Shown here in pieces: positions 65 through 63,859 of a DNA stretch of 64,000 nt. The number at the start of each line of letters is the position of its first letter. The first letter of the stretch is position 1. The stretch is from the IMG/VR virus record IMGVR_UViG_3300020154_000003, positions 186,001-250,000 of that record; one strand, written 5' to 3'. The translations under genes were made by a program, and so were the position numbers. Under the pieces are notes generated by a model. It saw nothing but the letters and a program-made list of their open reading frames with translations, had not been told where the DNA came from and ran no database searches.

Positions 65-89
65 TATACGTAAACATGAGGAAATTGTT
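65..89 (-). promoter_or_regulatory. Phage promoter AAC-N16-CGTATA
   Basis: Minus strand AAC-AATTTCCTCATGTTTA-CGTATA; one of 21 copies. Confidence 0.75.
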
Positions 90-96
90 CAAATCC

Positions 97-324
97 TTAA
101 TTAAGGATGTCTGCCATTACTTTCTCATATTCCTCATGTTCGCGGTTCAACTCTTCACACAATCTATTTAACTGATCACGGTGTGGAGAATTGCCAGCAG
201 AGAACCTTGATTTTCTAACGGTTACTTCCTCCACAACCTTCAATCCGTTCATCGTATCTAAAATACCAAAGGTTCGATAATTATGTATGGTCACCGACCT
301 AAGGATATATCTTTTATTCACCAT
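97..324 (-). CDS. Paralog family B small protein carrying the C-terminal tag
   Basis: RY...ILD...LNREHEEYEKVMADIL, shared with six other ORFs. Confidence 0.7.
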   Translation of the reverse strand: MVNKRYILRSVTIHNYRTFGILDTMNGLKVVEEVTVRKSRFSAGNSPHRDQLNRLCEELNREHEEYEKVMADILN

Positions 325-559
325 TATAATGAGGCCAACAACCTAATTCCATCAACTCTTTATTATACCACCTATATTCCCTATTCATCTGCTTACACAT
401 AAATTTAATATTTCTATGCCCATCATCTTCATAATTGAATATATTAAAAAATTCTTCCTTATGAATTATTTGATATTGATTATAAGTATCTCTGAGGATG
501 TAACGATGTTTTGAATCAACCATTTCCACATCCACAACATATCTTTCTTCAACTCCCAT
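314..559 (-). CDS. Paralog family B small protein
   Basis: RY...LRDT...MNREYRWYNKELMEL. Confidence 0.65.
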   Translation of the reverse strand: MGVEERYVVDVEMVDSKHRYILRDTYNQYQIIHKEEFFNIFNYEDDGHRNIKFMCKQMNREYRWYNKELMELGCWPHYNGE

Positions 560-1218
560 TCAACAACTACAGATTGACAATAGCACAATTATAAAAAACA
601 TGAGTAGACCTGACAGGCCAGCAAGACCGAGTATCCAAGGATTGGTTTCCTTTTCCAGTTTTTTGCCTTCCATGTTTATCTATCTTGAAGGGATGCAGTC
701 ACAATAAATTTAGAGGCAATCATCTTGCAGCGTTTCAGCTTAACAAAATTGAATGTGGTTATTGTTGTGGTTTCTCCATCGCGATCACTCACTATCCAAG
801 AATCCTTAGTTTTAGTTCTTGTCTTCCAATTATTCTGATGGAGTTTTGTATATCCGTTACCTCTACGATGTTCCTTTTCCTTTTTATCAACATACTTCCT
901 AGCAGCCTTTCCATTTTCAAATAGAAGGTCACCCATTACGTATGAAGCAGAATGCTCGTAATCAGTTTTATAGTTTGAGTGTTGGATGTGTTTGAGAATA
1001 ACAACCATTACTTAAAATTTAGGATCAAATCTTTCGTCAACATAGGTTCGTCTTGCCCTTGCAGCCATGTTACAGCGATCCTGTATCATTTGGTGCAGCT
1101 TCCAAGCATCTTCTTCTGCAAGGTAGATCACTAATGCTGTTTGACCATCCTCTTGGGTAAAGGTCATCTTGATCTTTCCTTGGTTGTAATCGACTGCTTC
1201 TGGATTTAACATGAGCGT

Positions 1219-1944
1219 TTACTTTATATGTTTTTGAAACCATTCATCGGAAGACATGTGTGTAATTTGGAACTTCTCAGGTGCAGTTCTATTTCCTTCC
1301 ATTGCCTTGATGAAGTTGTGATACTTATAGCAGAAGGTAATCACTTCGTCTCGCGTGTATTTTTCTTCTTCCTCAACACGATGGAGAGTAGTTTTATAGT
1401 TGGAATTTAGTTTGACTTCATATCGCCACTTATATCTATGCTCAACCCTATCCTCTGGATTAGGGTGATACACCTTTTCACATTCTACCAATACCTTATC
1501 ACCATTCTTCATCTTACCATCTACAATTGCTTGCATATGTTCAGGTGAGAATTGTTCAGGTAGGACAAGTACCTTCTTTCCCATTCCATTTGGTTCAAAA
1601 GCACCATAGTCTTTATCTTCTTTAGTATGAATTATATCGCCAGTGAAAGGCATCCACCATTTATCACCTGACTCTATATTCTCTGTTTCAGAAATGATAA
1701 TTGGTTTGTAGCATTTACCTTTAGAATCACCATCTGAGTTTATACCTAGGAATGGCTCACAGAGAAATAATCTACCGTCCGATTTCTTAAAAATTAGATA
1801 TTTATTTTCCTCCCAATGTGTTTCAATAAGAAGAAGTTTACCTTCAACAACAGGCACATCCATCGTTACCATTTGAGGTAGTCCATCATTATTATCAGGA
1901 TATGTGATGGTGTGATTTTTAATGTTTCTAACCTTAATTCCCAT
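1219..1944 (-). CDS. Paralog family A hypothetical phage protein
   Basis: GKLLLIE...KPIIISETE.IE.GD.W...KKVLVLPEQFS.E.MQAI.DGK.K.GDKVLVECE. Confidence 0.8.
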   Translation of the reverse strand: MGIKVRNIKNHTITYPDNNDGLPQMVTMDVPVVEGKLLLIETHWEENKYLIFKKSDGRLFLCEPFLGINSDGDSKGKCYKPIIISETENIESGDKWWMPFTGDIIHTKEDKDYGAFEPNGMGKKVLVLPEQFSPEHMQAIVDGKMKNGDKVLVECEKVYHPNPEDRVEHRYKWRYEVKLNSNYKTTLHRVEEEEKYTRDEVITFCYKYHNFIKAMEGNRTAPEKFQITHMSSDEWFQKHIK

Positions 1945-2764
1945 GTCTTCCTTTTATGAAGTTTTTCTTTTTAAATTCTTCCCATGCAGTTTCATCACTA
2001 CGATCTCCAATAATACCAACAAAGGATTTGGGATTGCAGAAGAATGCTACTTTCACCATTTCCTCACCATACATTTGCTCATTATTTTCTGCAAATGCTT
2101 GAAACTTATCTCCAAGGTAATGCAGGCAAGCGGCCTTAACCATTTCCTTATCGGGATGGTTTAAAAGATAGATTCTAAGATCAGCAATTGTGTTGAATTG
2201 ATCAATGGAAACTTTTGTAGCGACAGTGGGGTATAATGTTAGAGGCGACTTAATTGGATATTGATAAACATATCCATTATATTCGTGGCCAGTACATTCG
2301 ATCATCAATTCTTGCTGATCTTTGAGTTTTTCATCAATGATTGCTTGAAGTTGTTCGTTTGAGAAATTTTCAGGGAGTGCTAACACCTTAGCTGACCAGA
2401 CAGTAACTGTAGGAGATTTACGTCTTATATCATCCATCAACCTTCCCATTTGATTATAGTGATCCGCTTCACGTTCATCCGCAACTTGTTTGAGCAAATG
2501 ATTCGATCTTTTGGCATTACCGTATACCACCCAATCACCGACTTCAATCTTTTCTGTTTCGGAAATAATGATTGGTGCAAACCATAATAATGGGTGAGTA
2601 ATATTACCACCAACAAAATCTTTGAAATAGCAGGTCGTTGTATATCCTCGTTGGTCAACCAGCAGAAGTTTTCCATCCGCTACCAGTACTTGTTCATTAG
2701 GAGGTAAAGCCTTTCCATCAGGCGACTCTCTGAGCCTCCTTGTTACTTTAGCTTTGATGTCCAT
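1934..2764 (-). CDS. Paralog family A hypothetical phage protein
   Basis: DGKLLLVD...PIIISETEKIEVGDW...KVLALPENFS.EQLQAI. Confidence 0.8.
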   Translation of the reverse strand: MDIKAKVTRRLRESPDGKALPPNEQVLVADGKLLLVDQRGYTTTCYFKDFVGGNITHPLLWFAPIIISETEKIEVGDWVVYGNAKRSNHLLKQVADEREADHYNQMGRLMDDIRRKSPTVTVWSAKVLALPENFSNEQLQAIIDEKLKDQQELMIECTGHEYNGYVYQYPIKSPLTLYPTVATKVSIDQFNTIADLRIYLLNHPDKEMVKAACLHYLGDKFQAFAENNEQMYGEEMVKVAFFCNPKSFVGIIGDRSDETAWEEFKKKNFIKGRHGN

Positions 2765-4009: not shown

Positions 4010-4144
4010 GGTCGTTTTTTTTATCTTTGAGGTACTTATATATTTTCTCAGACGTTCGGAATTTAATGTAGGCTATCCACAATACGCCAAAAGCACAAAT
4101 GGTTAGCACTGACAGACCTATGATTTCTCGTATATCCATTTTTC

Positions 4145-4206
4145 TGGTGAAGGGAGAGGGAATCGAACCCCCGATCAAAAACTCTAACCAACTGAGTTAT
4201 CCCTTC
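4145..4206 (-). ncRNA. 62-nt tRNA-like RNA lacking the entire anticodon arm
   Basis: GAAGGGA/TCCCTTC acceptor stem + ACCA, D arm ACTC-AGTTGGTTA-GAGT, 8-nt linker TTTTGATC, T arm GGGGG-TTCGATT-CCCTC. Confidence 0.8.
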
Positions 4207-4371: not shown

Positions 4372-4619
4372 ATGTTTATTCATTAACAATCAACATTGCA
4401 GGGGAATTGGCAGGTGCCACCCATAGTACAATTTTGACTACGACCAGTTGGGCTTGAAGGATCACCCCAAAACCCTCTTTTCACCAATTGTATAGAGACT
4501 TGAGCCTCAGTAGCCTTTCTGGAGAGTACTCGATATTTATCGTTGTACTTATCGGCTCTCCTTTTGGCCCTTGCTTTACGTTTTGCTATTTTTTCTGCTC
4601 TGGTCATGATTTACAGTAT

Positions 4620-4644
4620 TATACGCAAAATACTATAAATTGTT
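4620..4644 (-). promoter_or_regulatory. Phage promoter AAC-N16-CGTATA
   Basis: Exact spacing; just upstream of ORF 4383..4607. Confidence 0.75.
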
Positions 4645-8722: not shown

Positions 8723-8747
8723 TATACGTAAAGATAGTGGATTTGTT
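8723..8747 (-). promoter_or_regulatory. Phage promoter AAC-N16-CGTATA
   Basis: Exact spacing; upstream of ORF 8465..8701. Confidence 0.75.
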
Positions 8748-11949: not shown

Positions 11950-11974
11950 TATACGCATTTCAATGAAAAATGTT
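11950..11974 (-). promoter_or_regulatory. Phage promoter AAC-N16-CGTATA
   Basis: Exact spacing; upstream of ORF 11637..11927. Confidence 0.75.
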
Positions 11975-12494: not shown

Positions 12495-12570
12495 TCGAGT
12501 AAAAGTAAAGAAATTTGTTTATTTCACCAAATCCTTAATTAAGTAAAGGTTTTAGGTCGGTCGCAGTCAG

Positions 12571-12578
12571 TATTTATA
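12571..12578 (+). promoter_or_regulatory. Putative late-promoter motif TATTTATA
   Basis: 3 nt before ATG 12582; same geometry at 23822. Confidence 0.45.
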
Positions 12579-16481: not shown

Positions 16482-16506
16482 TATACGTAAAACGTATAAA
16501 AATGTT
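16482..16506 (-). promoter_or_regulatory. Phage promoter AAC-N16-CGTATA
   Basis: Exact spacing; upstream of ORF 16234..16473. Confidence 0.75.
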
Positions 16507-16885: not shown

Positions 16886-16910
16886 TATACGGTAAATTCG
16901 TAGAATTGTT
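16886..16910 (-). promoter_or_regulatory. Phage promoter AAC-N16-CGTATA heading the left minus block
   Basis: AAC-AATTCTACGAATTTAC-CGTATA. Confidence 0.7.
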
Positions 16911-17064: not shown

Positions 17065-17110
17065 CTTAATTAAGTCGCGAAGAAAAAGTTAAAATATTTT
17101 ATAACTTCGT

Positions 17111-17135
17111 AACCTTTTTAAATAGTTTACGTTAG
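17111..17135 (+). promoter_or_regulatory. Phage promoter, GTAACCTTTT subclass (AAC-N16-CGTT)
   Basis: Heads the plus-strand block. Confidence 0.65.
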
Positions 17136-17161
17136 AATACGTATATTTAAATGTCATCAAA

Positions 17162-18001: not shown

Positions 18002-18015
18002 TCCTAGGTTTTTGT

Positions 18016-18040
18016 AACCTTTTCATATATGTTACGTTAT
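18016..18040 (+). promoter_or_regulatory. Phage promoter, GTAACCTTTT subclass
   Basis: AAC-N16-CGTTAT; implies the next ORF starts at ATG 18062 rather than 18029. Confidence 0.65.
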
Positions 18041-18311
18041 TATCATTATAACAACAAAATCATGACACTCAATAGCTTACTCCACATACCAAAGACAGAC
18101 CTGAAAGCTAATGTCATCACAGGGTCGTTTGCTACTGTGGTTCTCTCATACTTCAAAGACAAGGGCGTAGAGGTGGTTAGCATCACTCCTGACGCATCCA
18201 AAACCTTTGACACCTTGGTGGTTATCTACAATGGTAAACGCAAGAAATTGAAGATCAATCGTGATGTCAGCGCATATAAAATTGGCAAGCGTATTGGTTG
18301 TGAAACTAAAT

Positions 18312-18336
18312 AACATATTCGAACTTTTTACGTATA
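18312..18336 (+). promoter_or_regulatory. Phage promoter AAC-N16-CGTATA
   Basis: 7 nt before ATG 18344. Confidence 0.75.
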
Positions 18337-18777: not shown

Positions 18778-19143
18778 TTGACGATAATGAGTGATCACAT
18801 TATGAAGAAGCCTTGCAAGCATTGTCCCTACAGGAACGATGTTAAACCCTTTCTGACACCAGAGCGGGGTGAGGAACTTGCATATCTTGCTCAGAACCGT
18901 TACAACTCATTTCCCTGCCATAAAACCACTGTATTCGATGAAAATAGCGAAGAAGGCGGTATGATGGCGACCAGTGATTCTAAAACTTGTGCTGGTTTTG
19001 TTACCTTGCAATGCAACGAAGGCATGAGCATACCCAAGGGGTTCGAACCAGCTTTTGAAATCGTCTATACTGATGCTTGCGAAATGTCACAAGCCTATAG
19101 TGAGGAATATCGGGATGAAGCCCTCAATCCACAACATTCTTGA
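18778..19143 (+). CDS. DUF6283-like Cys/His metal-binding protein
   Basis: PCKHCPYR...FPCHK...CAG motif set. Confidence 0.5.
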   Translation: MTIMSDHIMKKPCKHCPYRNDVKPFLTPERGEELAYLAQNRYNSFPCHKTTVFDENSEEGGMMATSDSKTCAGFVTLQCNEGMSIPKGFEPAFEIVYTDACEMSQAYSEEYRDEALNPQHS

Positions 19144-19157
19144 ATTGTTTACGTATA
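19133..19157 (+). promoter_or_regulatory. Phage promoter AAC-N16-CGTATA
   Basis: Upstream of ORF 19181. Confidence 0.75.
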
Positions 19158-20051
19158 AGTAATTACAAACGCAAGAAACCATGAAAGATTTATTTTATTC
19201 TCACCACGAAGGCATCCTTTTTTACATTGGTGGTTATGAAGATACCACCAACGTTAAGACGATGATCTCCATCCTGCAGAATAATTACAACTTCTTCGAG
19301 AAGCTTGCTAAGGTGAAAGAAATTCACACTGACGTTATCACCAAATCCAGTAGGTACAAGAACATGCGAGTTTATTGGGCTGTAACTTCCGAGAGACCTA
19401 TAGACGCATTCGTGATAGGTGCGAATGATTCTTCAGATAATCTGAAAAAATGGACGATGCGTAAATGGTTGGAGAATTAAAGTATGCACAGCGAGAAGTT
19501 TTTATGGAGAAAAAATAATCCTTACGGTTTAAGTAAACCTGAGGCTGAACACATTGAACATTTCATGCAAAGGATGTTGGAAAGATTCAATATCATCATT
19601 TCCATAGGTGAATACTACGCCATCATAAACGACATCCAAAACAATAAGGCGAGACATATCTACAGCACCAATTCCTCAAATGGTATTTTTTCAATCAACT
19701 TGCATGGTCAAGAGGTTTGGGTCATGTATGGTGGGGTATCTGATGACATACCTGCTCGATTGAAAACTGCAATAAGACCACACGATCAATTTATCCTGCC
19801 TGATGCTTTATCCCACGTCTATAATCAAACGAGTTTTAGTAAGGCTGTTTATGAAGTTATTGAACAATTCAAACAACTCTCAGAGCAGATCGATCTAAAT
19901 GATAAGAAAATATTTTTTATGACCAGTAAAGCACATCCAGTACTCAAGAAAGGTGCTTTGATGTATAAGCAATACGGAGAGAATTGTGACAAACTACATT
20001 TTTATTCGATGGCTATCCGACATTTAATTCGAGAAAATCAAGTAAAAGTGT

Positions 20052-20076
20052 AACCTTTTACTGCTGGTTCCGTATT
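20052..20076 (+). promoter_or_regulatory. Phage promoter, GTAACCTTTT subclass
   Basis: AAC-N16-CGTATT upstream of ORF 20098. Confidence 0.65.
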
Positions 20077-21544
20077 AATACATATAAACAAACAGTCATG
20101 GATTACACGGATTACAAAAAAGAAACAGCATCAAAGAATGCTACCGCCATCTGCGATTTGCTAAATTCTAGTGGTGCCTATCCGATGGAAACAGGTAAGG
20201 CCATCACGAATGAACATCGCTATCTTCAATCAGAGTTCTGGAACGTGGTTGAAGGGTTCATCCAAGAATCGGCTGTCAGACATGCTGCAGGATATTACGA
20301 TGATCGCAATTCATATGCAGTAAAAATGGCTGCAAAGATTGCTCCCCTCCTTGATCAATTCAGACAAGAAATCGCAAACGAAAGAAGTAAATAATTATGA
20401 AAAAGCCAGTAAGTATAGCATTGGAATTTCTTGCACAGAGAAATCCGTTCGATGTGTCTCAAGCAGAATGGGTAATTATGCTCATGGACTTTACAGACAT
20501 TCATGGTGAGGATGCTCTCATTGCTTTGGCAGGATTTTACATCTACGCCATTAAAGAGATGGGAGAGAAAAGCACCCATGCGATTAAATCTACTTTCATG
20601 CATGACGTGATGGGTAGGAAAGATCGTTTCATGTGCCCTCGCTCATCAGCTTACGGAGAAATTTTTCGTACAGAATTTAACCTTGCAGCATAACCATGAA
20701 AATCGAGAAATTTAATTGTGGCGACAGTTTCCGGGCCAAGTACTTCAAAGGTCTGGTCACCGTGAAAAGTGTTCTTGACAAGGACAACATACTCAAAGTC
20801 GAAATCGATCCTCAGGAAAAGGGCCGCTTTACTTGGGAAGAAGATTGGGATTTGCAACACACCATTTGGGGATTCGAACGTGGAGATTATAATCTTTATA
20901 AGCCAGCACCCGTGAAAAGCGAATTTGATTCTGCTCTTGACGAATACGTTAAGTATCATATCGATGAAGCTTGGAGAGATGAAAAAGAGCAAAAGGCTTT
21001 AAAAGCCAGTGACGGTACTGTCTCGTATCTTGACGTGTTAAGGCAAAACGTGATGAATGCTGCCGTTAAAGAAAGTATCCCGCTCCTTAACTTAGATTAA
21101 TTCCAATGGACGAATTAGTTAATTTCAACTTTGAAGTGATTGTCAATCTTTCAAACGGAGAAAATGCTGCTTGCGGTGCAATGTCATTTAAGCAGGTAAG
21201 GCGAGTGATGGACTCAGTACAAGAGTTCAAATCATCCAAGGGGATAAGCATTGTAAATGCAGAAATATACCCACAAACGGCTAAAGGTCGCCATCAAATG
21301 GAAAAAGATTTCGCGATCATGAACGCATCAGGAAACATCAATCACTATTCTTTTAAAGAGAAAGTCCCAACACAGACCGTTGAAATATGATTTCTAAATT
21401 GCGCTACTACGACTATATTGCATTTCTTGTCGGCATATCACTTGCTGTCTTTACACAATATTTCTTCAAATTACCGGGAATGTTCATATGGGCGTTTGTC
21501 TTGATTGAAGTTGTAATTTACTTAAGATTAAGACCATTATCGTA

Positions 21545-21569
21545 AACATTGTCAGAAATTTTACGTATA
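21545..21569 (+). promoter_or_regulatory. Phage promoter AAC-N16-CGTATA
   Basis: Exact spacing; drives a unit with no real ORF. Confidence 0.7.
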
Positions 21570-21574
21570 TTTAA

Positions 21575-21695
21575 GTCCTAAGTATTTCTTATTTGTAGAA
21601 ATCATTTTATTAAATCTAATGTTACAGCCATGAAAAAGTAATTGATTTAAGTTGTTGAACGAAAACCCCGAATTATGTTTGGGGTTTTTTCGTTT
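21575..21695 (+). ncRNA. Candidate ~120-nt small RNA containing an MKK minigene
   Basis: Own promoter and an intrinsic terminator AACGAAAACCCCGAA/TTTGGGGTTTTTTCGTT; no ORF longer than a few codons. Confidence 0.45.
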
Positions 21696-21701
21696 ATATG
21701 T

Positions 21702-21726
21702 AACCTTTTACTGCCGCATCCGTTTA
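21702..21726 (+). promoter_or_regulatory. Phage promoter, GTAACCTTTT subclass
   Basis: GTAACCTTTTACTGC is identical to the 20050 copy; AAC-N16-CGTTTA. Confidence 0.65.
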
Positions 21727-22252
21727 ATAAATTAAGGTCAAAAAGCAAGTAAACATCAAAATTTCCTCATATTAATGCCCAACACAATGAATAAGATAGA
21801 AAAATTTTTAGGAGAGAAGTTAGAGAAATTCATCCTATCCTTATTTGGGTCATCGAAAAATCGAGTACAATCCAAATATATCCCTGAATTAGGGGATAGA
21901 GTTCGTTTTGTTGGTACTCATTATAAGTATGGAGAATCTGCATATTACGGCTTTGAAGGGGTTGTAGATCAGGTAGGTGATGACTATATTTCCATCAATT
22001 CAGGTACTGGCATACTGGTTTGCAGCTTTCTAAAGAGCAGACACACTCGCTTCCAACGTGTTGAGGATCAGGTTCGTGGTTAGTTTTCCCCAAAGTGTTG
22101 ATTGAATTCCACTTTAAATAGTATAAACCTGTCAAAAAAGCGTGATTTTACCATAAAATAGGAACTTTTCAAGATTGGCACGAGTTTGAATAATAGTAAC
22201 GTAAAACAAGGACTTAAAACCAAACTTTTACAAAACCTTTAAAGCCCAATTT

Positions 22253-22789
22253 ATGAAAACTAACGCAAATCCGAAAAACGTAATCAAAGCCGTTGAAACA
22301 GTTTCAAAGAACATCTATGGTGGAAACGTAATCTTCAGGCGGTATCCTGAGAAATTGACCAAGAACGTGATTCGCTTCACCTTGAAGACAAAGGATGCCA
22401 ATAAACCCGGATCGATGGTCACCAAAGAAGGGTTGAAGCAACCCAAGGCCAACTGGCAGGTGCATGAGGACGTGATGAAGGAGTTATTCAAACTCGAACC
22501 CAAGCCAAACATCTACGTGGACACCACATATGGTCGCCAGTACAACGAAAACTTCTCCACGACCGAAGTTTCTGAGGCAGTTCGCGAAGAAAATACTGAA
22601 GAAACTGAGGCTGCGGAAGAATCTTCCCAAAAATCCGAAACTCTTACACGTAAAGAGAAAACCCCCCGAAACGCTCGTAAAGTTGCGAAGGTAACTAAGA
22701 AGCAGCAAAAAATGGAGTTTTCCAAGTTCGTTAAAGCCCTGAAATATGTCTTCGATCACAAAGAACTTCTTGACGAAGTGGAGGCATAG
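22253..22789 (+). CDS. Hypothetical protein with an acidic then basic low-complexity tail
   Basis: E/T/S-rich linker followed by a K/R-rich segment. Confidence 0.65.
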   Translation: MKTNANPKNVIKAVETVSKNIYGGNVIFRRYPEKLTKNVIRFTLKTKDANKPGSMVTKEGLKQPKANWQVHEDVMKELFKLEPKPNIYVDTTYGRQYNENFSTTEVSEAVREENTEETEAAEESSQKSETLTRKEKTPRNARKVAKVTKKQQKMEFSKFVKALKYVFDHKELLDEVEA

Positions 22790-22816
22790 CAACTATAAAA
22801 GCATTTTCTGCAATCT

Positions 22817-22849
22817 AACCCTTGATATTACCTATCAAGGGTTTTTTTT
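22817..22849 (+). terminator. Rho-independent terminator
   Basis: AACCCTTGATA/TATCAAGGGTT + T run. Confidence 0.85.
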
Positions 22850-23270
22850 GGTCTATATCGATTAACCCTTTACATTTGTTAATGTCAAACAGCAGCAGTA
22901 TATTTACCACTGTATTTACCACTTAATAACCTATATTTTTTATGACAAAAACTAGTAACAGCAAAGGGGCTTCGGGCAACTGCAATGAACAAGAATTCGA
23001 TTTACTCTGCAATTATGGAGTGGTCGTGGCATCCAGATCAATTGTAGTTGAAAATGACGAGAGGGACAAGTATAGATACTCCCTATACAAAGTTCTCGAA
23101 CCATTCCCAACATTCGATGAGTATGTTAGGGGTGAAGAGTTTGACGAAGGTGAATTGATTGTGAATTGTAGGACGATGGATGAAATTCTTTTCGCTCAAA
23201 ACAAATATAAAATACAAGTAAACTCTCCCATATTGGTATAGGTGAAAGAAACAAGTTCACAAATCAAAAC

Positions 23271-23302
23271 ACCTCTTATCTAGCCCAATAAGAGGTTTTT
23301 TT
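23271..23302 (+). terminator. Rho-independent terminator
   Basis: ACCTCTTAT/ATAAGAGGT + T run. Confidence 0.8.
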
Positions 23303-23317
23303 ATGCGCTGTTATTAA

Positions 23318-23346
23318 AACAATTTTGAAAAGTATACGTATATTTG
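23318..23346 (+). promoter_or_regulatory. Phage promoter AAC-N16-CGTATA overlapping a TATATTTG -7 element
   Basis: Directly upstream of the ~440-nt structured RNA. Confidence 0.75.
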
Positions 23347-23349
23347 TGC

Positions 23350-23797
23350 ATAGGCTGCTAAAACAGCATAGATAGAATCCCGGAGGGATTGCTGGACGGT
23401 TGATCGGTTAGTTTAGATAGGATTTTAAAACATGCCTCCCGAATGAGGCAGAAGCGGGTGACAACCCCGCACGATCAGAGTAAAACATATGTTCTAATAG
23501 AAGGATGCCTGACTTTCATCAGGAGGTATCGGGTGAACCAATTCCCGGTTATGTTGAAATAAAGACCGATAGTACGAATCCGGGTGCAAAGTCCTGATAA
23601 ACGGCATAGCGAGTGTTGTAAACAGGCAGGCGGGAATCTCGCTTACATACCCGTTGGGATGGCTCCCGTTGACAAGCTGCAGGCATGTTAGTGAGTCAAT
23701 GACACAAAATGGGTTAGAGGTGACAGTTGATGGAACCTTAAAGTTGGTGGGAGTCCAACATTAAAGCCATCGGGGAGTAATCTTCGGTGGCTTTTTT
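23350..23797 (+). ncRNA. Candidate ~440-nt highly structured ncRNA
   Basis: No ORF of 60 aa or more, raised GC, many hairpins (AATCCC/GGGATT, TGCCTC/GAGGCA, GCGGG/CCCGC, CCTGA/TCAGG, GTTGG/CCAAC), own promoter and terminator. Confidence 0.7.
23763..23797 (+). terminator. Rho-independent terminator
   Basis: AAAGCCATCGGGGA-GTAA-TCTTCGGTGGCTTT + T run. Confidence 0.8.
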
Positions 23798-23832
23798 AAA
23801 TACAAATTTCCACACTTAACCTATTTATAGTC

Positions 23833-23925
23833 ATGAAAAGATTTATCTGGACTCTTATTGTCATTGTGATGGTACTGGCTACAGTTGCTGCTTGCAGCCC
23901 GCACACTTGCCCTACATATCATTAA
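23833..23925 (+). CDS. 30-aa micro-lipoprotein, not in the ORF track
   Basis: MKRFIWTLIVIVMVLATVAA|CSPHTCPTYH*; lipobox VAAC; preceded by TATTTATA. Confidence 0.65.
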   Translation: MKRFIWTLIVIVMVLATVAACSPHTCPTYH

Positions 23926-24078
23926 TTAGCTGATTGCCCACGGTGGTAAAACAGTTACGAACCCGTTCAACTCAGTTGTAGCGGGTTTTGCCATTTTATA
24001 ACATCCTTAATTTACTGTTAACTATTTTTTACAAAATCAGCGATCCTGATAAATATACCTAACGTTATTGCCAACTAA

Positions 24079-24103
24079 AACAATTTCCTTAACTTTGCGT
24101 ATA
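24079..24103 (+). promoter_or_regulatory. Phage promoter AAC-N16-CGTATA
   Basis: Upstream of membrane ORF 24135. Confidence 0.75.
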
Positions 24104-24444
24104 AGTTAACAAGTTCACGAAACAAAAAAATAAAATGGGTTTCCTCTTAATTTTAGGTATTTTCATCCTCATGATCCTCTGGAATGCATTTTCATGGGGA
24201 GTCGTATTCTTCAATTTTTACAATTGGTTCATCTTCCCTGTATTTGGTTTCGGTATGATGCCAGAAATTGTGTTGAGTCAAGCTATCGGTATTATGTTGG
24301 TAATTGGTCTTTTCAAAAATCATGATGTCGGTACATTAAAGGAAGAGTTCTATGCGAATGATTTCATTAGCAGAATGCTTCTAGGACTTGCCTCACCTTG
24401 GCTAACGTTGTGTATAGGATGGCTCGTAAAAAATACTTTGCTTT

Positions 24445-25794: not shown

Positions 25795-25820
25795 AACCTT
25801 ATTGACCCATATTGCGTATA
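25795..25820 (+). promoter_or_regulatory. Phage promoter AAC-N17-CGTATA
   Basis: 17-nt spacer variant upstream of ORF 25845. Confidence 0.6.
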
Positions 25821-27421: not shown

Positions 27422-27444
27422 ACTGCTATTGTCATAAATACTAT

Positions 27445-30736: not shown

Positions 30737-32383
30737 TTAAGGGTTTTGATAGTTACGTTCAAGAGCAGCAACCAATGAAACACTGTTAGTAGTACTTCTT
30801 GCAATTGTACCAGTAGCTTTTACATACTGACCAGTTGTCAAACCAATACCTACAACAGTCACATCAGCATCCGTAGCTGCAGTTCTACCACCTTGCTCGT
30901 TAGCATCATAATTGAAAGATAATTGAATGCTGTTCTGACCTGAAATATCACCAGTCATTGGATTACCATCATTGTCTTCAACTAACACTGCGCCAGATTC
31001 ATTAAAATCATTTCCAGCACCCGGAAGAGTGGTAAAATAAACCCAATATTTAGCACTAGCATCAGCAACCAAGTTAGCACCAAAGTTAAGAGTTAATACC
31101 GCAACGAATGGATATGTTCTTAATGTTCCGGTATTATCCGTAAACTGAATTCTGTTAGTATCTGCAGACTGGAATCCTTCAATTAATACACCACTACCAC
31201 CACCGTTAGGGTTAGTTGGGAGTGCGCTACCGCAAACCAACGTATCACCTACAAATCTTAATAATTCGTCTGTTGTCTTACCAATAACTGAATTTGTGGT
31301 TGAATCGATGTCAGTGTCTTGACGCAATTGATATTGCACCTTTTCATAAATTTCTTCCGCAGTTGCAGAGACAGGAACTGCTCTGTATAATGTGAATGAT
31401 TGATTACTCACAGCACTTGCGAAAGTTGTAGTTATTACAACTGTTGTTGCTCCCGGAGTACCACTTATATTATAAGTACCAGCATTTGCCCCTTCATGGA
31501 TAATTAACGTTCCACCAATGTAATCAGAACCAGCTATTCCACCTTCTGCACTTGTCAACGTAGTACCGCCTGCAGTAGTTGAACCATCAACTCCTGAATG
31601 AGTGCCTACATCTATTACGATACCAAAATTTCTATCTGTTGTTGAATCAATATCTTTAGTGAATGGCTGATCGAAATATTTAATGGTTATTTCACTATAT
31701 GGTGTATCACCAGATATAGTGCTATCATCTTCACTAATTTTCAAATCAGTACTTGTGTTTAACGCGAAGGCAAACACTTTAGGTGCTAAGAGATCAGTTG
31801 CACCAATTGAATTCAATGAAGACTGAGAGTAGACCTGACCTTGTTCACGCAAGAAGACCTGAAATGTTGACGATCTATTATAACCATCACCATAGTTTGC
31901 ATCACCATTAGGGTCATCAATGATTTGAACAACTTCGTTAACGGCACCTAAATAAACAAAATCAGTAGCACCATTGCCTTGGTTATAATAAACTTGGTCA
32001 TCTCCTTCTACTGTACCGATAGTTCTAATCCCTGCAAAATGCTTAATTACGTTGCCTGAGGTATTTCTTACAAGAAATCCACCATCACGAATGAGTTGAA
32101 TTGCGCCAGCATCTAGTAACTCCCAACCATTAACAAATTCGAAGAATTCGTCCGTGATAGGGTTCATCGGGAAGTCAAAGGCAGCTAAATTTTTGGTTTG
32201 AGGGTCATTACGCCATTCTTCCTTTAAGAAAGAGTAAAGGGCTTTAATGGTAAGACCGTCACTGGATAAATCACCAGTTTCGTTTAATTTAATGGTCTTA
32301 TTTGTTGTATTAATATAGACTTCGGTAGAGCCATTGTCAACCGAACCATCTGCCAGTAAATCTGGATCAATAATTTTTGCCAT
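30737..32383 (-). CDS. Putative virion structural or tail-associated protein
   Basis: 548 aa, T/G/D-rich, MAKIIDPD...ERNYQNP; late-type motif upstream. Confidence 0.65.
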   Translation of the reverse strand: MAKIIDPDLLADGSVDNGSTEVYINTTNKTIKLNETGDLSSDGLTIKALYSFLKEEWRNDPQTKNLAAFDFPMNPITDEFFEFVNGWELLDAGAIQLIRDGGFLVRNTSGNVIKHFAGIRTIGTVEGDDQVYYNQGNGATDFVYLGAVNEVVQIIDDPNGDANYGDGYNRSSTFQVFLREQGQVYSQSSLNSIGATDLLAPKVFAFALNTSTDLKISEDDSTISGDTPYSEITIKYFDQPFTKDIDSTTDRNFGIVIDVGTHSGVDGSTTAGGTTLTSAEGGIAGSDYIGGTLIIHEGANAGTYNISGTPGATTVVITTTFASAVSNQSFTLYRAVPVSATAEEIYEKVQYQLRQDTDIDSTTNSVIGKTTDELLRFVGDTLVCGSALPTNPNGGGSGVLIEGFQSADTNRIQFTDNTGTLRTYPFVAVLTLNFGANLVADASAKYWVYFTTLPGAGNDFNESGAVLVEDNDGNPMTGDISGQNSIQLSFNYDANEQGGRTAATDADVTVVGIGLTTGQYVKATGTIARSTTNSVSLVAALERNYQNP

Positions 32384-32547
32384 AAAGATGGGAAATTGTT
32401 ATTTATAATGAGATTGCTAATTTGTATGTACAACTAATGTACTATACACAAAATAAATACAAGATTTTTGTCCAAAAAATACCCACCTAAGGCAAAATCC
32501 CCACTTTTTTTCAAAAATATCATAAATTTATATAATATTTTATAAAT

Positions 32548-38111: not shown

Positions 38112-38136
38112 TATACGTAAAAAACGTACAAAAGTT
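38112..38136 (-). promoter_or_regulatory. Phage promoter AAC-N16-CGTATA
   Basis: 7 nt before ATG 38104. Confidence 0.75.
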
Positions 38137-44513: not shown

Positions 44514-44538
44514 TATACGTAATACTTAAGAATTTGTT
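44514..44538 (-). promoter_or_regulatory. Phage promoter AAC-N16-CGTATA
   Basis: Upstream of ORF 44246..44503. Confidence 0.75.
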
Positions 44539-53402: not shown

Positions 53403-53427
53403 TATACGTTAAAAGTCTGAAAATGTT
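53403..53427 (-). promoter_or_regulatory. Phage promoter AAC-N16-CGTATA
   Basis: Exact spacing; upstream of ORF 53018. Confidence 0.75.
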
Positions 53428-60457: not shown

Positions 60458-60667
60458 TTATGTTTCACTTACAAAATTAATTACTTCAGATATATAAGCT
60501 TGATAGAGTTCCAGACGAACAATATAAAGATGTTCCATCCTCAATGACTCTTTCAATCTTTTGTATTTTGGAACATTCATACAATCATCACATTCCAACC
60601 CATCAGCAACAATTCCAAATTCGCTAGGACGTTTCCCACAAATGAAACATTCACAATTTATTTCCAC
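60458..60667 (-). CDS. Small CxxC/CxxC Zn-finger protein carrying the C-terminal tag
   Basis: CFIC...CDDC; ends LYQAYISEVINFVSET. Confidence 0.55.
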   Translation of the reverse strand: MEINCECFICGKRPSEFGIVADGLECDDCMNVPKYKRLKESLRMEHLYIVRLELYQAYISEVINFVSET

Positions 60668-62008: not shown

Positions 62009-62033
62009 TATACGCAAACCAGAGGAAAATGTT
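62009..62033 (-). promoter_or_regulatory. Phage promoter AAC-N16-CGTATA
   Basis: Exact spacing; upstream of ORF 61723. Confidence 0.75.
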
Positions 62034-62289
62034 ACAAAAAAGGCTACTTTTTTATCATCCTGAATTAAGGATGGAGGTAGTAAACAAGGGTGTTAAAGAC
62101 AAGAAATGCAGCACCGAATGCTACTAGTATTGAAACCACTATTGAAATTTTTAACGCCCTTGCCCTTGCTTTATTTTTTGCGATCTCCTTCCTCACGTTT
62201 CTTTTCAATAAATTGGTATAATAAGATGAACAGGATAAGAGTGACATAAAAGCTAATGAATAGGTTTATAAACATTCTTATAAATAGTA

Positions 62290-63597
62290 AAAGTTTTAGG
62301 CAAGTGCATCGACCATTTGGGTTCGCAGCAATGGTCTTGCCTAAAACATAACTGAGAGTTTCTCAGTTTTTCTTTAAATAGTAACCCACGCCTTAATAGT
62401 ATAGGTTCGGTTCTTACTCTGTTCGAGCACTGAGTTTTTCAGAACCTACGACTGTTTGTACATCTGCCAGTACGACCCACAGACAAATTACTGGCATCAT
62501 GGTATTCCAATGGCTCTCACGTTCGCCAATCCTCTCTTCCCTCTCTTTTGCTTGGCCATCATGACGATGGTTTTCATTCTGACAAGGATCAAGGTCGCTA
62601 CAATACTTACGGGTTTGTAGGGCATATTGCAAGCCCCTTGCAACACGACCGAGTTTTTTTAGAGATAGATAGAAATGCTTACTTATGTGTTCAAGTTCGG
62701 CATCCCCGTGTGGCAGCTTTGCAATCCGTACTTCACGATGAATGAGACCGTGGAGCAAAGTTTTCTCTTTAAGTCGCTAACCATGCGACAGCCAGTCTTA
62801 TTTTCAATGTCACGATCTAAAGGATGTTTAACAGTCGATCTTAATGGGTATTTCAAGGTTCCTGACTTCATCCACTACTACGAACCCTTTTTCGTAACCA
62901 TGACATTCAAAAAAACAGCAACTACACAGAAGGTTTTTTAATGTTGTTTCACTCAATCAGCAGCTATACAACTGTGTAGTCCCTTACGTTATCCCCCTTA
63001 TCATCAGTGTGGCCACACGGATTTACGGTTGGTTCCCATATCAGTTTACCGTTCAAAAATCATTATGTTGTGATCAGCCATCGAGTACTTTTATCCACCA
63101 ACGCCACTCTATGTATTGGCGCACAACTTTGGCTGGCTATGGTCACCATCTTAAAATCACAACATTAAATAACATGTGGTCAGGGATTATGGCATCTCGC
63201 TTGCAGTGCCAAACTTGCGGATAATCCTCCCCTCCACAATGAGATAATAAATTGACGAATGATCGAGATTTATATAGCCGCGAAGTAGAACAACGCTCTC
63301 TTTCTGTGCTGCGCATTTATCGCCAATTTAAAATAAAAAATTAAGTCTCATCACTACAGTTGTAATGAGATTGTCGTAACTTCCTCTTACTTTCTTCAGA
63401 GCGAGATTTAATATGATCAGAGCGTACTCGCGAAGGAGCGACACATTTAAGCGTTCTAAGACCAGTACCGAAGTACCGACCCAATGAGTAATCACATTAC
63501 GAAACCAACTTTACCAACTTACTGTACGCATACACAGGTGTCATTACTCTGTTTACCAATGTGTGTCGGTGAGCCTCTGCAGCGAGACCCTTGGCTT
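62290..63597 (-). ncRNA. Candidate giant (~1.3 kb) structured ncRNA in a GOLLD/ROOL-like context
   Basis: No credible ORF, raised GC, more than ten 7-12 bp nested helices; downstream of a promoter, tRNA-like element and boxA; ends in a 12-bp stem + TTTT. Confidence 0.7.
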
Positions 63598-63608
63598 AAT
63601 TTCTATTT

Positions 63609-63620
63609 TTTCAAAGAACA
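63609..63620 (-). promoter_or_regulatory. rrn-type boxA antitermination element
   Basis: TGTTCTTTGAAA on the minus strand, matching the GTTCTTTGAAA boxA of rRNA leaders. Confidence 0.55.
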
Positions 63621-63729
63621 ATGAGGTGCAGGAAGGTCGGTTATGCCTCCTTTTTCCAATACGTACATTTAAACGTTCATCCTGCAAACCTTGCAGTAAC
63701 CACACCTCCAACCCTATAGGAGTTGTTTG

Positions 63730-63819
63730 TAGGGGTGAGAGGATTCGAACCTCCACTCTTCGGGGCTTCAGTAATGCAACCACAGCCCCGATGTTTTATC
63801 CAGTTAAACTACCTCCCCT
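63730..63819 (-). ncRNA. 90-nt tRNA-like RNA with an extended anticodon arm
   Basis: AGGGGAGG/CACCCCT-A acceptor (imperfect), D arm GTTT-AACTGGATA-AAAC, 8-bp stem TCGGGGCT/AGCCCCGA capped by 16 nt, T arm GGAGG-TTCGAAT-CCTCT. Confidence 0.75.
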
Positions 63820-63834
63820 GTAATCATATGCAAT

Positions 63835-63859
63835 TATACGGAGAATAATGTGAATTGTT
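63835..63859 (-). promoter_or_regulatory. Phage promoter AAC-N16-CGTATA driving the tRNA-like + giant RNA unit
   Basis: Exact spacing; 15 nt upstream of the tRNA-like 5' end. Confidence 0.75.

What the first reader, a model, noticed from the sequence alone, without database searches (positions are those of the whole stretch)
65..63859. 21 copies of an ECF-sigma-like promoter, AAC-N16-CGT(A/T), in two subclasses
Seen: AAC-N16-CGTATA at 65, 4620, 8723, 11950, 16482, 16886, 38112, 44514, 53403, 62009 and 63835 (minus strand), and at 18312, 19133, 21545, 23318 and 24079 (plus strand), with an N17 variant at 25795. A GTAACCTTTT...CGT(T/A) subclass occurs at 17111, 18016, 20052 and 21702, only in the plus block. 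Every copy lies at a gene boundary and is co-oriented with the downstream gene. Established: -35 AAC / -10 CGT with 16-17 nt spacing is the classic ECF sigma signature (e.g. Bacillus SigW TGAAAC-N16-CGTA). Inference: the phage runs its early or middle programme through a phage-encoded or hijacked host ECF sigma, possibly two different ones.
Basis: partly seen in the sequence, partly recalled or inferred. Interest (0 to 1): 0.68.

Follow-up and report, generated by a model that had tools for sequence, protein, structure and literature searches.

The report
Jumbo phage ECF-sigma promoter regulon
The repeated AAC-N16-CGT motif is a real set of promoters of the extracytoplasmic-function (ECF) sigma type in a 366-kb uncultured soil jumbo phage that has no RNA polymerase genes but carries two ECF sigma genes, so it is a new, well-populated example of a phage reprogramming host RNA polymerase with its own sigma factors.

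Summary
The window has 16 exact AAC-N16-CGTATA sites (0.32 expected), one N17 variant and four GTAACCTT...CGTT sites. All lie between genes and point at the downstream gene.

The window is part of a 366,038-bp virus record from soil. The genome has 47 exact copies, or about 50 class A and 32-34 class B sites by weight matrix. More than 93% are intergenic. An unseeded search for two-part motifs recovers the same two motifs.

No polymerase gene was found. The genome has two bona fide ECF sigma genes (sig1, sig2) and a divergent third (sig3), all outside the window.

- Class B heads a cluster of small early-type genes, including sig1.
- Class A heads DNA-metabolism genes, a tRNA and ORF-free stretches.
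- Late genes (portal, terminase) carry a third motif, aGTATTTAT.

The sigma trio and the motifs recur in six other 320-370-kb metagenomic phages. The spacer is 16 or 17 nt depending on the genome.

An ATG is never closer than 10 nt to CGT and sits at exactly 10 nt in 16 promoters. This places the start site there and implies leaderless mRNAs.

Which sigma reads which class, and what starts class B transcription, remain open. No start site was mapped. Verdict: a new member of a known kind.

The parts
65..89 (-). Class A promoter (AAC-N16-CGTATA); ATG 11 nt after CGT, ORF runs off the window start
   Evidence: (matrix score 28.9 bits)
4620..4644 (-). Class A promoter; ATG of a 74-aa ORF (4383-4607) 15 nt after CGT
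8723..8747 (-). Class A promoter; ATG of a 78-aa ORF 24 nt after CGT
11950..11974 (-). Class A promoter; ATG of a 96-aa ORF 25 nt after CGT
16482..16506 (-). Class A promoter; ATG of a 79-aa ORF 11 nt after CGT (near-leaderless)
16886..16910 (-). Class A promoter followed by about 100 nt without an ORF. That stretch contains a Bacteroidota-type sigma-A-like promoter (TTG-N18-TATATTTG, 16810).
17109..17143 (+). Class B promoter GTAACCTTTT-N11-ACGTTAGAATAC; ATG of a 279-aa ORF 29 nt after CGT
   Evidence: (36.9 bits)
18014..18048 (+). Class B promoter; an in-frame ATG at 18062 lies 24 nt after CGT (83 aa from there). The longest ORF in this frame (94 aa) starts at 18029, inside the promoter, so the downstream ATG is the more likely start.
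18312..18336 (+). Class A promoter; ATG of a 73-aa ORF exactly 10 nt after CGT (leaderless type)
19133..19157 (+). Class A promoter; ATG of a 99-aa ORF 26 nt after CGT
20050..20084 (+). Class B promoter with a CGTA -10 (hybrid type: AACC with CGTA); ATG of a 98-aa ORF 24 nt after CGT
21545..21569 (+). Class A promoter followed by 208 nt without an ORF; class B promoter 21700 lies inside this stretch
21700..21734 (+). Class B promoter; ATG of a 102-aa ORF 51 nt after CGT. A related soil strain carries GCAACCTTT...CCGTTTAAC at the same place.
   Evidence: loose end
23318..23342 (+). Class A promoter followed by an ORF-free stretch of about 790 nt (23343-24134): candidate non-coding RNA
   Evidence: (no Rfam family)
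24079..24103 (+). Class A promoter; ATG of a 103-aa ORF 34 nt after CGT
25795..25820 (+). Probable promoter with a 17-nt spacer (AACCTT-N14-CGTATAAT); ATG of a 100-aa ORF 27 nt after CGT. Not significant on its own.
38112..38136 (-). Class A promoter (AACT variant); ATG of a 157-aa ORF exactly 10 nt after CGT
44514..44538 (-). Class A promoter; ATG of an 85-aa ORF 13 nt after CGT
53403..53427 (-). Class A promoter; ATG of a 125-aa ORF exactly 10 nt after CGT
62009..62033 (-). Class A promoter; ATG of a 92-aa ORF exactly 10 nt after CGT
63835..63859 (-). Class A promoter heading a tRNA gene
63730..63818 (-). tRNA gene (Rfam RF00005, 44.3 bits) that begins 19 nt after the CGT of promoter 63835
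   Evidence: not found by ARAGORN

Best explanation
The 21 sites are promoters of the ECF (group IV) sigma type. The window belongs to a 366-kb jumbo phage from soil. Its terminase is T4-like, and it has no Shine-Dalgarno signal but Bacteroidota-type A-rich start contexts. No RNA polymerase gene was found, so the phage must use the host core enzyme. It redirects that enzyme with its own sigma factors: two true ECF sigmas (sig1, sig2) and one divergent sigma-like protein (sig3).

Three promoter classes fit three gene sets:
- Class B, G(T/C)AACCTT-N12-cCGTTaAtATAC, has about 32 copies. They sit in a divergent cluster at genome 156-177 kb plus window 17-22 kb. It drives small early-type genes and sig1 itself.
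- Class A, aAACAwTTT-N9-tTTrCGTATAa, has about 50 copies, 17 of them in the window. It drives helicases, RNA ligase, SbcCD, a tRNA and probable non-coding RNAs, so it is the middle class.
- A third motif, aGTATTTAT, heads the portal, terminase, lysis and baseplate genes, so it is the late class.

Transcription should start 9-10 nt after CGT. About one promoter in five would then give a leaderless mRNA.

My committed wiring is a cascade in which sig1, made from a class B promoter, turns on class A. Class B would be read by sig2, with sig1 feedback or a host ECF sigma as alternatives.

Shown: the motif statistics, positions, orientation and conservation; the sigma genes; the lack of any detected polymerase gene.
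Inferred: that the sites are promoters, the start-site position, the timing of each class, and every sigma-to-class assignment.
For: **Excess and placement**
- The window has 16 exact sites against 0.32 expected. The genome has 47 at N16 against 1-4 at N14, N15 and N17-N19.
- At 14 bits or more, 45 of 48 class A and 32 of 34 class B sites are intergenic, although intergenic DNA is 11.6% of the genome.
- 75% of class A and 82% of class B sites have an ORF ATG 10-40 nt after CGT, against 14% for random positions.
- An unseeded search for two-part motifs upstream of genes returns only these motifs.

**Sigma genes**
- sig1: Pfam Sigma70_r2 7.6e-13 and r4_2 2.8e-14. Its best solved relatives are AlgU, E. 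coli sigma-E and B. subtilis SigW (1e-12 to 4e-13).
- sig2: r2 2.6e-10, Sigma70_ECF 4.2e-8; best solved relative SigW.
- sig1 has K56, D84 and K171 at the positions that set ECF specificity, as SigW has R56, D84 and K171 (PMC7776599). SigW promoters read tGAAACnTTTt ... CGTA (PMC5758882).
- No RNA polymerase beta-prime family was found.

**Gene sets**: helicases and RNA ligase are in the window, portal and terminase sit behind aGTATTTAT, and SbcCD sits behind a class A promoter.

**Conservation**
- sig1, sig2 and sig3 recur as a trio in six other 320-370-kb virus records. Each has 24-58 AAC-N16/17-CGTATA sites.
- In G0 (this genome), G1, G2, L006 and L008 the sig1 gene is directly preceded by a class B promoter.
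- In G4, G9 and G11 the promoter array starts just after the sig1 gene; in G6 it starts about 2 kb downstream.
- K56 and D84 of sig1 are invariant in all seven genomes, as is CGTATA.

**Two classes**
- The base after AAC and the base after CGT are coupled, Fisher 1e-10.
- The genes behind class B promoters are not paralogues, so selection rather than duplication keeps the motif.

**Start site**: the ATG is never closer than 10 nt to CGT, and is exactly 10 nt away in 16 promoters.

**Precedent**: the sigma of phage 7-11 reads GTAAtg-N16-aCTA, with starts 6-9 bp away (PMC8948821).
Against: - No transcription start site, RNA profile or biochemical test exists. The runs labelled metatranscriptomic are kept as contigs and are probably DNA, so they say nothing about RNA ends.
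- The sigma-to-class wiring is ambiguous.
  - The spacer (16 or 17 nt) changes in both classes together from genome to genome. This fits one sigma reading both.
  - The four distant relatives keep both ECF sigmas but show only one AAC/CGT class.
  - sig2 has no class A or B promoter upstream and no motif class that can be tied to it.
  - Residue-to-base rules did not separate the two sigmas.
- If sig1 reads class B, its own promoter, something else must start the circuit. Only 14 intergenic Bacteroidota-type sigma-A promoters were found, and none lies in the class B cluster.
- The host assignment rests on translation signals and a 26%-identical Flavobacterium phage terminase only.
Confidence: 0.72

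Rival explanations
1. One phage sigma (sig1) reads both classes. Classes A and B would be sub-families of a single AAC-N16-CGT regulon, set apart by promoter strength or by extra DNA-binding regulators. sig2 would have another target not yet seen.
For: - The spacer length shifts together in both classes: G0 16/16, G1 17/17, G2 16 with some 17 in both.
- The distant relatives G4, G6, G9 and G11 carry both sigmas but a single class, GTAAC(A/C)...CGTATA.
- The sig1 gene carries a class B promoter in five genomes, the usual mark of ECF autoregulation (PMC7776599). It also sits next to class A arrays.
- Palindromes lie inside class B spacers (CCTTAATTAAGG, ACGTACAaTGTACGT) and could be operators that give class B its own timing.
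Against: - The -35 and -10 variants are tightly coupled in this genome, with only two AACA+CGTT hybrids against 39 AACA+CGTA. A single sigma does not predict that.
- A purely self-activated sigma cannot start from zero after infection.
- Spacer co-variation rests on only three genomes that have both classes.
Confidence: 0.3
2. A host ECF sigma is hijacked. The motif, or at least class B, would be read at the onset of infection by a host ECF holoenzyme. The phage sigmas would serve later steps.
For: - Class B heads the early-type cluster and the sig1 gene, and no Bacteroidota sigma-A-type promoter was found in that cluster.
- Something present at time zero must read class B.
- The motif is of the generic ECF type (PMC5758882).
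Against: - Host ECF sigmas are normally held inactive by anti-sigma factors (established knowledge).
- The motif and its spacer differ between related phages in step with phage lineage.
- The phage carries two ECF sigmas of its own.
- The host is unknown, so no host regulon could be compared.
Confidence: 0.12
3. The sites are read by the host primary sigma factor. CGTATAAT would contain a TATAAT -10 box and nnAACA a weak TTGACA-like -35 box at 17 nt.
For: - 21 of the 37 CGTATAAT octamers in the genome lie within 100 nt upstream of genes.
- The geometry nnAACA-N17-TATAAT can be drawn on class A (direct reading).
Against: - The conserved core is CGTA, not TATAAT. Strong sites read CGTAAAAG, CGTATTTA or CGTATATT, and class B reads CGTTAA.
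- Start contexts point to a Bacteroidota host, whose primary sigma reads TTG-N19-TAnnTTTG. A separate small set of such sites exists (PMC6847099).
- TTGACA-N16-18-TAnnnT is not enriched between genes: 4 found against 2.6 expected.
Confidence: 0.05
4. The sites are not promoters. They would be binding sites for a repressor, or a recombination or packaging signal, that happens to lie between genes.
For: - No RNA data exist.
- Palindromic elements do accompany some sites.
Against: - The motif is asymmetric, has a strict strand relation to the downstream gene, and never sits closer than 10 nt to the ATG.
- It is two-part with a fixed spacer that shifts by exactly 1 nt between genomes.
- It matches the ECF consensus, and matching sigma genes are present.
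Confidence: 0.03

Closest known systems
Bacillus subtilis SigW / SigX / SigM / SigV promoters (ECF sigma regulons)
   Same: - The architecture is the same: a -35 AAC followed by a T-tract (tGAAACnTTTt), a 16-17-nt spacer, and a -10 CGTA or CGTC.
- Single bases next to CGT sort promoters between closely related sigmas (PMC5758882).
- sig1 aligns with SigW at 1.6e-12 and shares K/R56, D84 and K171.
   Different: - Here the sigmas are encoded by a virus, and no anti-sigma partner was identified (none was searched for).
- The regulon is the phage's own early and middle genes, not an envelope-stress response.
- The host is probably a Bacteroidota, not a Firmicute.
- The extended consensus differs: AACAwTTT/CGTATAa and GYAACCTT/cCGTTaAtATAC.
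Sigma factor gp47 of Salmonella phage 7-11 (and gp36 of phiEco32)
   Same: - A phage-encoded sigma binds the host core enzyme.
- It reads a two-part promoter, GTAAtg-N16-aCTA, with starts 6-9 bp downstream (PMC8948821).
   Different: - Phage 7-11 has eight such promoters, all late, and one sigma in a small podovirus genome.
- Here there are about 80 promoters in two classes, placed before early and middle genes, with two ECF sigmas plus a third sigma-like protein in a 366-kb genome.
- Homology between sig1 and gp47 was not tested.
Bacillus phage SPO1 sigma cascade (gp28, then gp33/gp34)
   Same: There are successive promoter classes, each read by a phage sigma made in the preceding stage, on host core polymerase (established knowledge; PMC13401047 abstract).
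   Different: - SPO1 early promoters are of the host sigma-A type, and its sigmas are not typical ECF proteins.
- Here the earliest class is itself ECF-like, so its reader at time zero is unknown.
Group 2 jumbo phages (T4-like core, no polymerase, own sigma factors; Iyer et al. 2021)
   Same: No polymerase genes, phage sigma factors, and a T4-type terminase. The group includes phages of Bacteroidetes (PMC7824862).
   Different: - That survey reports a minimal gp55-like sigma and RpoD-like sigmas, and no promoter motifs.
- Here two ECF-type sigmas and their likely promoters are laid out.
- sig3 has no relative among 50,697 deposited phage records.

Membership tests
ECF (group IV) sigma-70 family: the proteins sig1 and sig2 | [quoted passage not shown] | tested here: met
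   - sig1 is 187 aa: TIGR02937 94.6 bits (cut-off 42.9), Pfam Sigma70_r2 48.5 bits and r4_2 52.9 bits.
- sig2 is 190 aa: TIGR02937 79.1 bits, Sigma70_r2 40.4 bits, Sigma70_ECF 33.8 bits. Its r4 match is below cut-off (21.8 against 24.1).
- Neither has a significant region 3 match.
ECF (group IV) sigma-70 family: the proteins sig1 and sig2 | Binds core RNA polymerase and directs initiation | not testable with these tools
   This needs purified proteins or a reporter assay.
ECF-type promoter | A -35 element containing AAC and a -10 element containing CGT, separated by a fixed 16-17-nt spacer | tested here: met
   - Spacer distribution for N14 to N19: 2, 3, 47, 4, 3, 1.
- The unseeded two-part motif search returns AACAT-N14-CGTA and AACCT-N14-CGTT.
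ECF-type promoter | Lies upstream of, and co-oriented with, the transcribed gene | tested here: met
   Of sites scoring at least 14 bits, 94% are intergenic, and 75-82% have an ATG 10-40 nt after CGT against 14% for random positions.
ECF-type promoter | Transcription starts about 6-10 nt after the -10 element | not testable with these tools
   - There is only indirect support: the ATG is never closer than 10 nt to CGT, and is exactly 10 nt away in 16 promoters.
- The available runs are contigs, which cannot show RNA ends.
ECF-type promoter | The sigma gene is preceded by its own target promoter (autoregulation) | tested here: inconclusive
   - sig1 is preceded by a class B promoter in G0, L006, L008, G1 and G2, but not in G4, G6, G9 or G11.
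- sig2 has no such promoter.
T4-type late system (gp55-like sigma with a single -10-like element): considered for sig3 and the aGTATTTAT motif | Homology or fold of gp55 / sigma region 2 | tested here: inconclusive
   - Pfam Sigma70_r2 gives 19.5 bits (cut-off 24) and TIGR02937 28.4 bits (cut-off 42.9).
- The model has pLDDT 73. Its best fold matches are mostly sigma factors, including gp55 (7d7c_F, target TM 0.49), but none reaches E <= 0.001.
- There is no sequence match to any solved structure.
Bacteroidota primary-sigma promoter (TTG-N19-TAnnTTTG): considered for the motif | A -7 element TAnnTTTG and a -33 element TTG | tested here: not met
   - Only 3-4 of the 16 window sites happen to read CGTATATTTG.
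- The TTG/TAnnTTTG pattern forms a separate small set: 14 intergenic against 4.8 expected.

The most novel reading that the evidence does not exclude
The earliest promoter class (class B) would be read at time zero by a sigma factor that the virion brings with it. sig2 lies in a conserved primase-sig2 unit with no class A or B promoter upstream, and late-type motifs lie further upstream in the same strand block. It would be made late, packaged, injected with the DNA, and would load host core polymerase onto about 30 early promoters, including that of sig1. An injected sigma factor has, to my knowledge, no precedent; injected whole polymerases do. A milder novel reading also stands: the clade is a natural experiment in sigma-promoter co-evolution, because the whole regulon switches between 16- and 17-nt spacers from genome to genome.
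Probability: 0.1. Interest if true: 0.8.

Novelty: new member of a known kind. Interest (0 to 1): 0.55.

Why it matters
Phage-encoded sigma factors are often annotated in large metagenomic phages, but their promoters are almost never known. Here about 80 promoters in two classes, a late motif and three sigma-family genes can be read from sequence alone. The pattern holds in seven complete genomes of an uncultured clade with no relative among deposited phages.

- This gives a ready map of early, middle and late genes for a group of 320-370-kb phages that probably infect soil and freshwater Bacteroidota.
- It provides compact, probably orthogonal sigma/promoter pairs for synthetic biology in a phylum whose primary promoters are unusual.
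- The clean 16-to-17-nt spacer switch across a whole regulon could show how ECF sigma spacing preference evolves.
- It raises a sharp question that can be tested: what reads an ECF-type early promoter at the first moment of infection?

Tried and rejected
- Megablast of 11 kb of the window against 50,697 phage records found no match. tblastn with sig3 found none either. The helicase and terminase gave only distant hits of 32% identity or less.
- A search of the viral contig collection with sig1 alone found nothing. Relatives came from sig2 and sig3 alignments instead.
- Sequencing runs: the best holder is a soil DNA run that may be the source. Four runs labelled metatranscriptomic hold 90-99%-identical fragments, but as contigs and probably DNA. 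They give no start sites, strand or expression.
- Rfam over 21400-24200 gave no credible family for the ORF-free stretches.
- I tried to assign sigmas to classes from specificity residues (RpoE positions 56, 84, 171, 172, 175; PMC7776599). sig1 looks like SigW. Position 84 of sig2 varies between N and D without tracking the class B -10 box. The result was inconclusive.
- I looked for co-variation between the sig1 region 4.2 helix and the AACA/AACC -35 variant across seven genomes and saw no simple rule.
- I tested whether class B similarity comes from duplicated gene cassettes. This is rejected: only one paralogous pair among 60 genes.
- I searched for a further two-part motif that could belong to sig2 in G0 and G11. 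None stood out.
- No shared AAC/CGT promoter lies upstream of the sig1-like genes of the distant relatives.
- The fold of sig3 gave weak, sigma-enriched but non-significant matches.
- The Pfam T7-type polymerase search found nothing in this genome or in any control genome, so it is uninformative.

Full report
**1. The observation**

Dinucleotide shuffles give 0.32 +/- 0.60, with a maximum of 2.

- The N17 site at 25795 exists but is not significant alone: 1 found against 0.47 expected.
- GTAACCTTTT occurs four times without mismatch, at 17109, 18014, 20050 and 21700, all on the plus strand. Each is followed 11 nt later by (A/C)CGT(T/A).
- 16 of 21 sites have the ATG of an ORF of at least 73 aa 10-34 nt after CGT, and 21702 has one at 51 nt.
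- Site 65 has an ATG at 11 nt whose ORF leaves the window.
- Site 63835 heads a tRNA at 63730-63818 (Rfam 44.3 bits).
- Three sites (16886, 21545, 23318) are followed by 103, 208 and about 790 nt without a convincing ORF.

So the claim that every copy lies at a gene boundary and is co-oriented holds. Four of the transcription units, however, begin with RNA genes or long untranslated stretches.

**2. What the window is**

The window is bases 186001-250000 of a single 366,038-bp virus record with 36% G+C. It was found whole in one soil metagenome run. Related strains of 90-99% identity occur in other soil runs.

- No deposited phage is similar at the DNA level.
- The terminase is T4-like. Its best cultured match is a Flavobacterium phage at 26% identity.
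- Genes have no Shine-Dalgarno signal: 8.8% carry a GGAG-type tetramer at -20 to -4, against 8.4% at random positions. Adenine peaks at -3, -6 and -13/-14.
- That is the pattern described for Bacteroidetes (PMC6847099), so a Bacteroidota host is likely but not shown.

**3. The motif in the whole genome**

The genome has 47 exact N16 copies, against 1-4 at N14, N15 and N17-N19. Octamers enriched upstream of genes point to three separate signals: CGTATAAT/TTTACGTA, GTAACCTT and GTATTTAT.

Weight matrices give 52 class A and 36 class B sites at 14 bits, against 1.4 and 0.6 in shuffled genomes. After each site is assigned to its better-scoring class, there are 48 class A and 34 class B sites.
- 45 of the 48 class A sites and 32 of the 34 class B sites are intergenic, although only 11.6% of the genome is intergenic.
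- 75% of class A and 82% of class B sites have an ORF ATG 10-40 nt after CGT, against 14% for random positions.

Among all 91 intergenic AAC-N16-CGT sites, the base after AAC and the base after CGT are coupled: AACA+CGTA 39, AACC+CGTT 25, hybrids 8 and 2 (Fisher 1e-10). The two subclasses are therefore real and discrete.

The consensus sequences are:
- Class A: aAACAwTTT-N9-tTTrCGTATAa
- Class B: G(T/C)AACCTT(t/a)-N11-cCGTTaAtATAC

The genes behind class B promoters are not paralogues: there is one pair among 60 genes. The likeness of these promoters is therefore kept by selection, not by duplication.

**4.

The genome has three matches to sigma-70 region 2.

- sig1 (genome 175356-175919, +, 187 aa) and sig2 (300487-301059, -, 190 aa) are bona fide ECF sigmas. 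TIGR02937 scores are 94.6 and 79.1 bits against a cut-off of 42.9, and each has region 2 and region 4 matches and no region 3.
- The closest solved relatives of sig1 are AlgU, E. coli sigma-E and B. subtilis SigW, at 4e-13 to 2e-12. The closest for sig2 is SigW.
- sig3 (31400-32173, +, 257 aa) is much more divergent. Its region 2 match is below cut-off. Its fold matches are mostly sigma factors, including T4 gp55, but none is significant.
- No beta-prime-like polymerase family was found. The T7-type model rang nowhere, not even in the controls, so that search says nothing.

The phage therefore has to use host core polymerase. This matches what Iyer et al. describe for their group 2 jumbo phages (PMC7824862).

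**5. Which genes each class heads**

- **Class B.** Sites are confined to genome 156-177 kb, in a divergent cluster of mostly 50-300-aa ORFs of unknown function, and to window 17-22 kb. sig1 lies inside the cluster. A class B promoter, GCAACCTTTACGTACAATGTACGTTAGTATAC, ends 30 nt before its ATG.
- **Class A.** Sites are spread over 44-290 kb. In the window they head operons that hold an HNH-helicase, a PIF1 helicase, an RNA ligase, homing-endonuclease-like genes and a tRNA. Elsewhere they head an SbcCD-like nuclease.
- **The third motif.** aGTATTTAT(a) lies 4-25 nt before the ATG of the portal, large terminase, an endolysin-like protein and many large unknown proteins in the structural regions.

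The layout is that of an early, middle and late programme. The timing itself is inferred.

**6. Start site**

Across all 82 sites, an ORF ATG is never closer than 10 nt to CGT. It lies at exactly 10 nt in 16 of them, 10 class A and 6 class B. Four of these are in the window: 18312, 38112, 53403 and 62009.

It agrees with starts 6-9 bp after the -10 box in phage 7-11 (PMC8948821). These 16 mRNAs would be leaderless or nearly so, which is uncommon in Flavobacterium johnsoniae, where 87% of leaders exceed 10 nt (PMC6847099).

**7. Relatives**

sig1 has few homologues, 9 in 5.8 billion proteins. sig2 has about 50 and sig3 more than 560, many on contigs of 200-370 kb.

I fetched six complete or near-complete virus records of 321-372 kb. 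In this report G0 is this genome, G1 and G2 are the closer relatives, and G4, G6, G9 and G11 are the distant ones. L006 and L008 are shorter related contigs.

- All six records carry the trio sig1, sig2 and sig3.
- All carry 24-58 AAC-N-CGTATA sites and the aGTATTTAT motif.
- The spacer is 16 nt in G0, G2, G4 and G11, and 17 nt in G1, G6 and G9.
- G1 and G2 also have a class B cluster, at 254-270 kb and 9-24 kb, with sig1 inside it and a class B promoter directly before sig1. The same holds on contigs L006 and L008.
- In G1 both classes use 17 nt. In G0 both use 16 nt.
- The four distant relatives show one class only, tGTAAC(A/C)wTT...CGTATAa. In G4, G9 and G11 the array begins just after the sig1-like gene; in G6 it begins about 2 kb downstream.

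**8. How it most likely works, and what is open**

The general claim is well supported by sequence evidence: these are ECF-type promoters served by phage ECF sigma factors on host core polymerase. I put it near 0.7-0.8. The wiring is not settled.

For a cascade in which class B leads to sig1, which turns on class A:
- Phage sigma genes are normally transcribed by the preceding stage.
- sig1 heads the CGTATA arrays in distant relatives.
- K56 and D84 of sig1, which are SigW-like, are invariant in all seven genomes, as is CGTATA (PMC7776599, PMC5758882).
- The region 4.2 helix of sig1 varies, as the class A -35 box does: AACA in G0, G1, G4 and G11, and AACC in G2, G6 and G9.
- The sig2 helix YSLTSSTVSNKINY is identical in G0, G1 and G2, as is the class B box AACCTT.
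- The coupling of -35 and -10 variants also suggests two readers.

For a single reader:
- The spacer changes in both classes together.
- Distant relatives have two sigmas but one class.
- The position of the class B promoter before sig1 is the classic mark of ECF autoregulation.

The cluster has no Bacteroidota-type sigma-A promoter, and sig2 has no class A or B promoter of its own. A host ECF sigma, early expression of sig2 from an unrecognised host-type promoter, or a sigma brought in by the virion all remain possible.

**9. Comparison with what is known**

The motif works like the B. subtilis SigW, SigX, SigM and SigV promoters, including the T-tract after AAC and sorting by bases next to CGT (PMC5758882). 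It is not a member of those regulons.

The system works like the phage 7-11 and phiEco32 sigmas (PMC8948821) and like the SPO1 cascade. It differs in using true ECF sigmas, in the number of promoters, in serving early and middle rather than late genes, and in its probable host phylum.

I found no paper that describes this clade or its promoters in four searches aimed at that question, out of six in all (the other two were). That is absence in the library searched, not proof.

**10. Verdict**

This is a new member of a known kind, with some unusual traits: two classes, leaderless starts, a spacer switch across the whole regulon, and an ECF-type early class with no evident reader.

Noticed in passing
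window 12570-12577 (+), 27434-27441 (-), 32453-32460 (-); genome-wide: A third upstream motif, aGTATTTAT(a), has 87 exact copies in the genome, 53 of them within 100 nt upstream of genes. It lies 4-25 nt before the ATG of the portal, large terminase, endolysin-like and many structural-region genes. It is enriched upstream of genes in all six related genomes examined. It is probably the late promoter, perhaps read with sig3.
   Followed up: partly
window 96, 4907, 12534, 17065, 17962, 25615, 27155, 33823, 48660, 53502 (10-nt palindromes); 41 in the genome: The palindrome CTTAATTAAG occurs 41 times in 366 kb, where base composition predicts about one. 27 copies lie inside coding regions. In class B promoters at genome 158-164 kb it abuts the -35 box (AACCTTAATTAAGGTT). 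It may be a binding site for a phage DNA-binding protein. Its function is unknown.
   Followed up: partly
genome 174312-174347 and 175290-175325 (outside the window); L006 8351, 8955, 9942; L008 4133: The spacers of the class B promoters around sig1, including its own, are filled by the perfect palindrome ACGTACAaTGTACGT. It is kept in relatives (GTACAATGTAC in L008, CCAGTACTGG or GGACAATGT in G1). It looks like an operator laid over the promoter of the sigma gene.
   Followed up: no
window 23343-24134 (+): A stretch of about 790 nt without a convincing ORF follows a top-scoring class A promoter (23318). No Rfam family matches it. It is a candidate long non-coding RNA.
   Followed up: partly
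window 63730-63818 (-) and 4148-4206 (-): Two tRNA matches were found by Rfam (44.3 and 45.4 bits) but not by ARAGORN. The first is 89 nt long and sits 19 nt after the CGT of a class A promoter. The second is only 59 nt long.
   Followed up: no
genome 163735-163765, 171184-171215, 172288-172315 (outside the window); L006 4738, 6065; G1 254529, 264441: Several class B promoters are followed by a conserved leader, ATACATACGAAyGC...CAAGTAGGAGAGsCGAA, with no ORF start for 190-1300 nt. It is kept in relatives. It is a candidate small RNA or regulatory leader of the early region.
   Followed up: no
window 16810 (-), 21652 (+), 22848 (+), 24068 (+), 48399 (-): There are candidate host-type (Bacteroidota primary sigma) promoters, TTG-N18-20-TAnnTTTG: 14 intergenic in the genome against 4.8 expected. 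Three outside the window (90318, 101814, 113410) share a longer motif, TTGsAA..yCGTATTTA..TTACmTTTG.
   Followed up: partly
genome-wide; window 18312, 38112, 53403, 62009: In 16 promoters the ATG lies exactly 10 nt after CGT, and it is never closer. This implies leaderless mRNAs in a phage whose probable host phylum mostly uses leaders longer than 10 nt.
   Followed up: yes
related genomes G001, G002, G004, G006, G009, G011: The whole regulon uses a 16-nt spacer in four genomes and a 17-nt spacer in three. Where two classes exist, both use the same length. No matching insertion or deletion was evident in the sigma linkers.
   Followed up: partly
genome 300487-302117 (outside the window) and the same place in G1, G2, G4, G6, G9, G11: sig2 always lies directly downstream of a DnaG-like primase gene, and in this genome next to an Hsp20 gene. 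It has no recognisable promoter of its own, and a terminator-like hairpin lies just upstream of the primase gene.
   Followed up: partly
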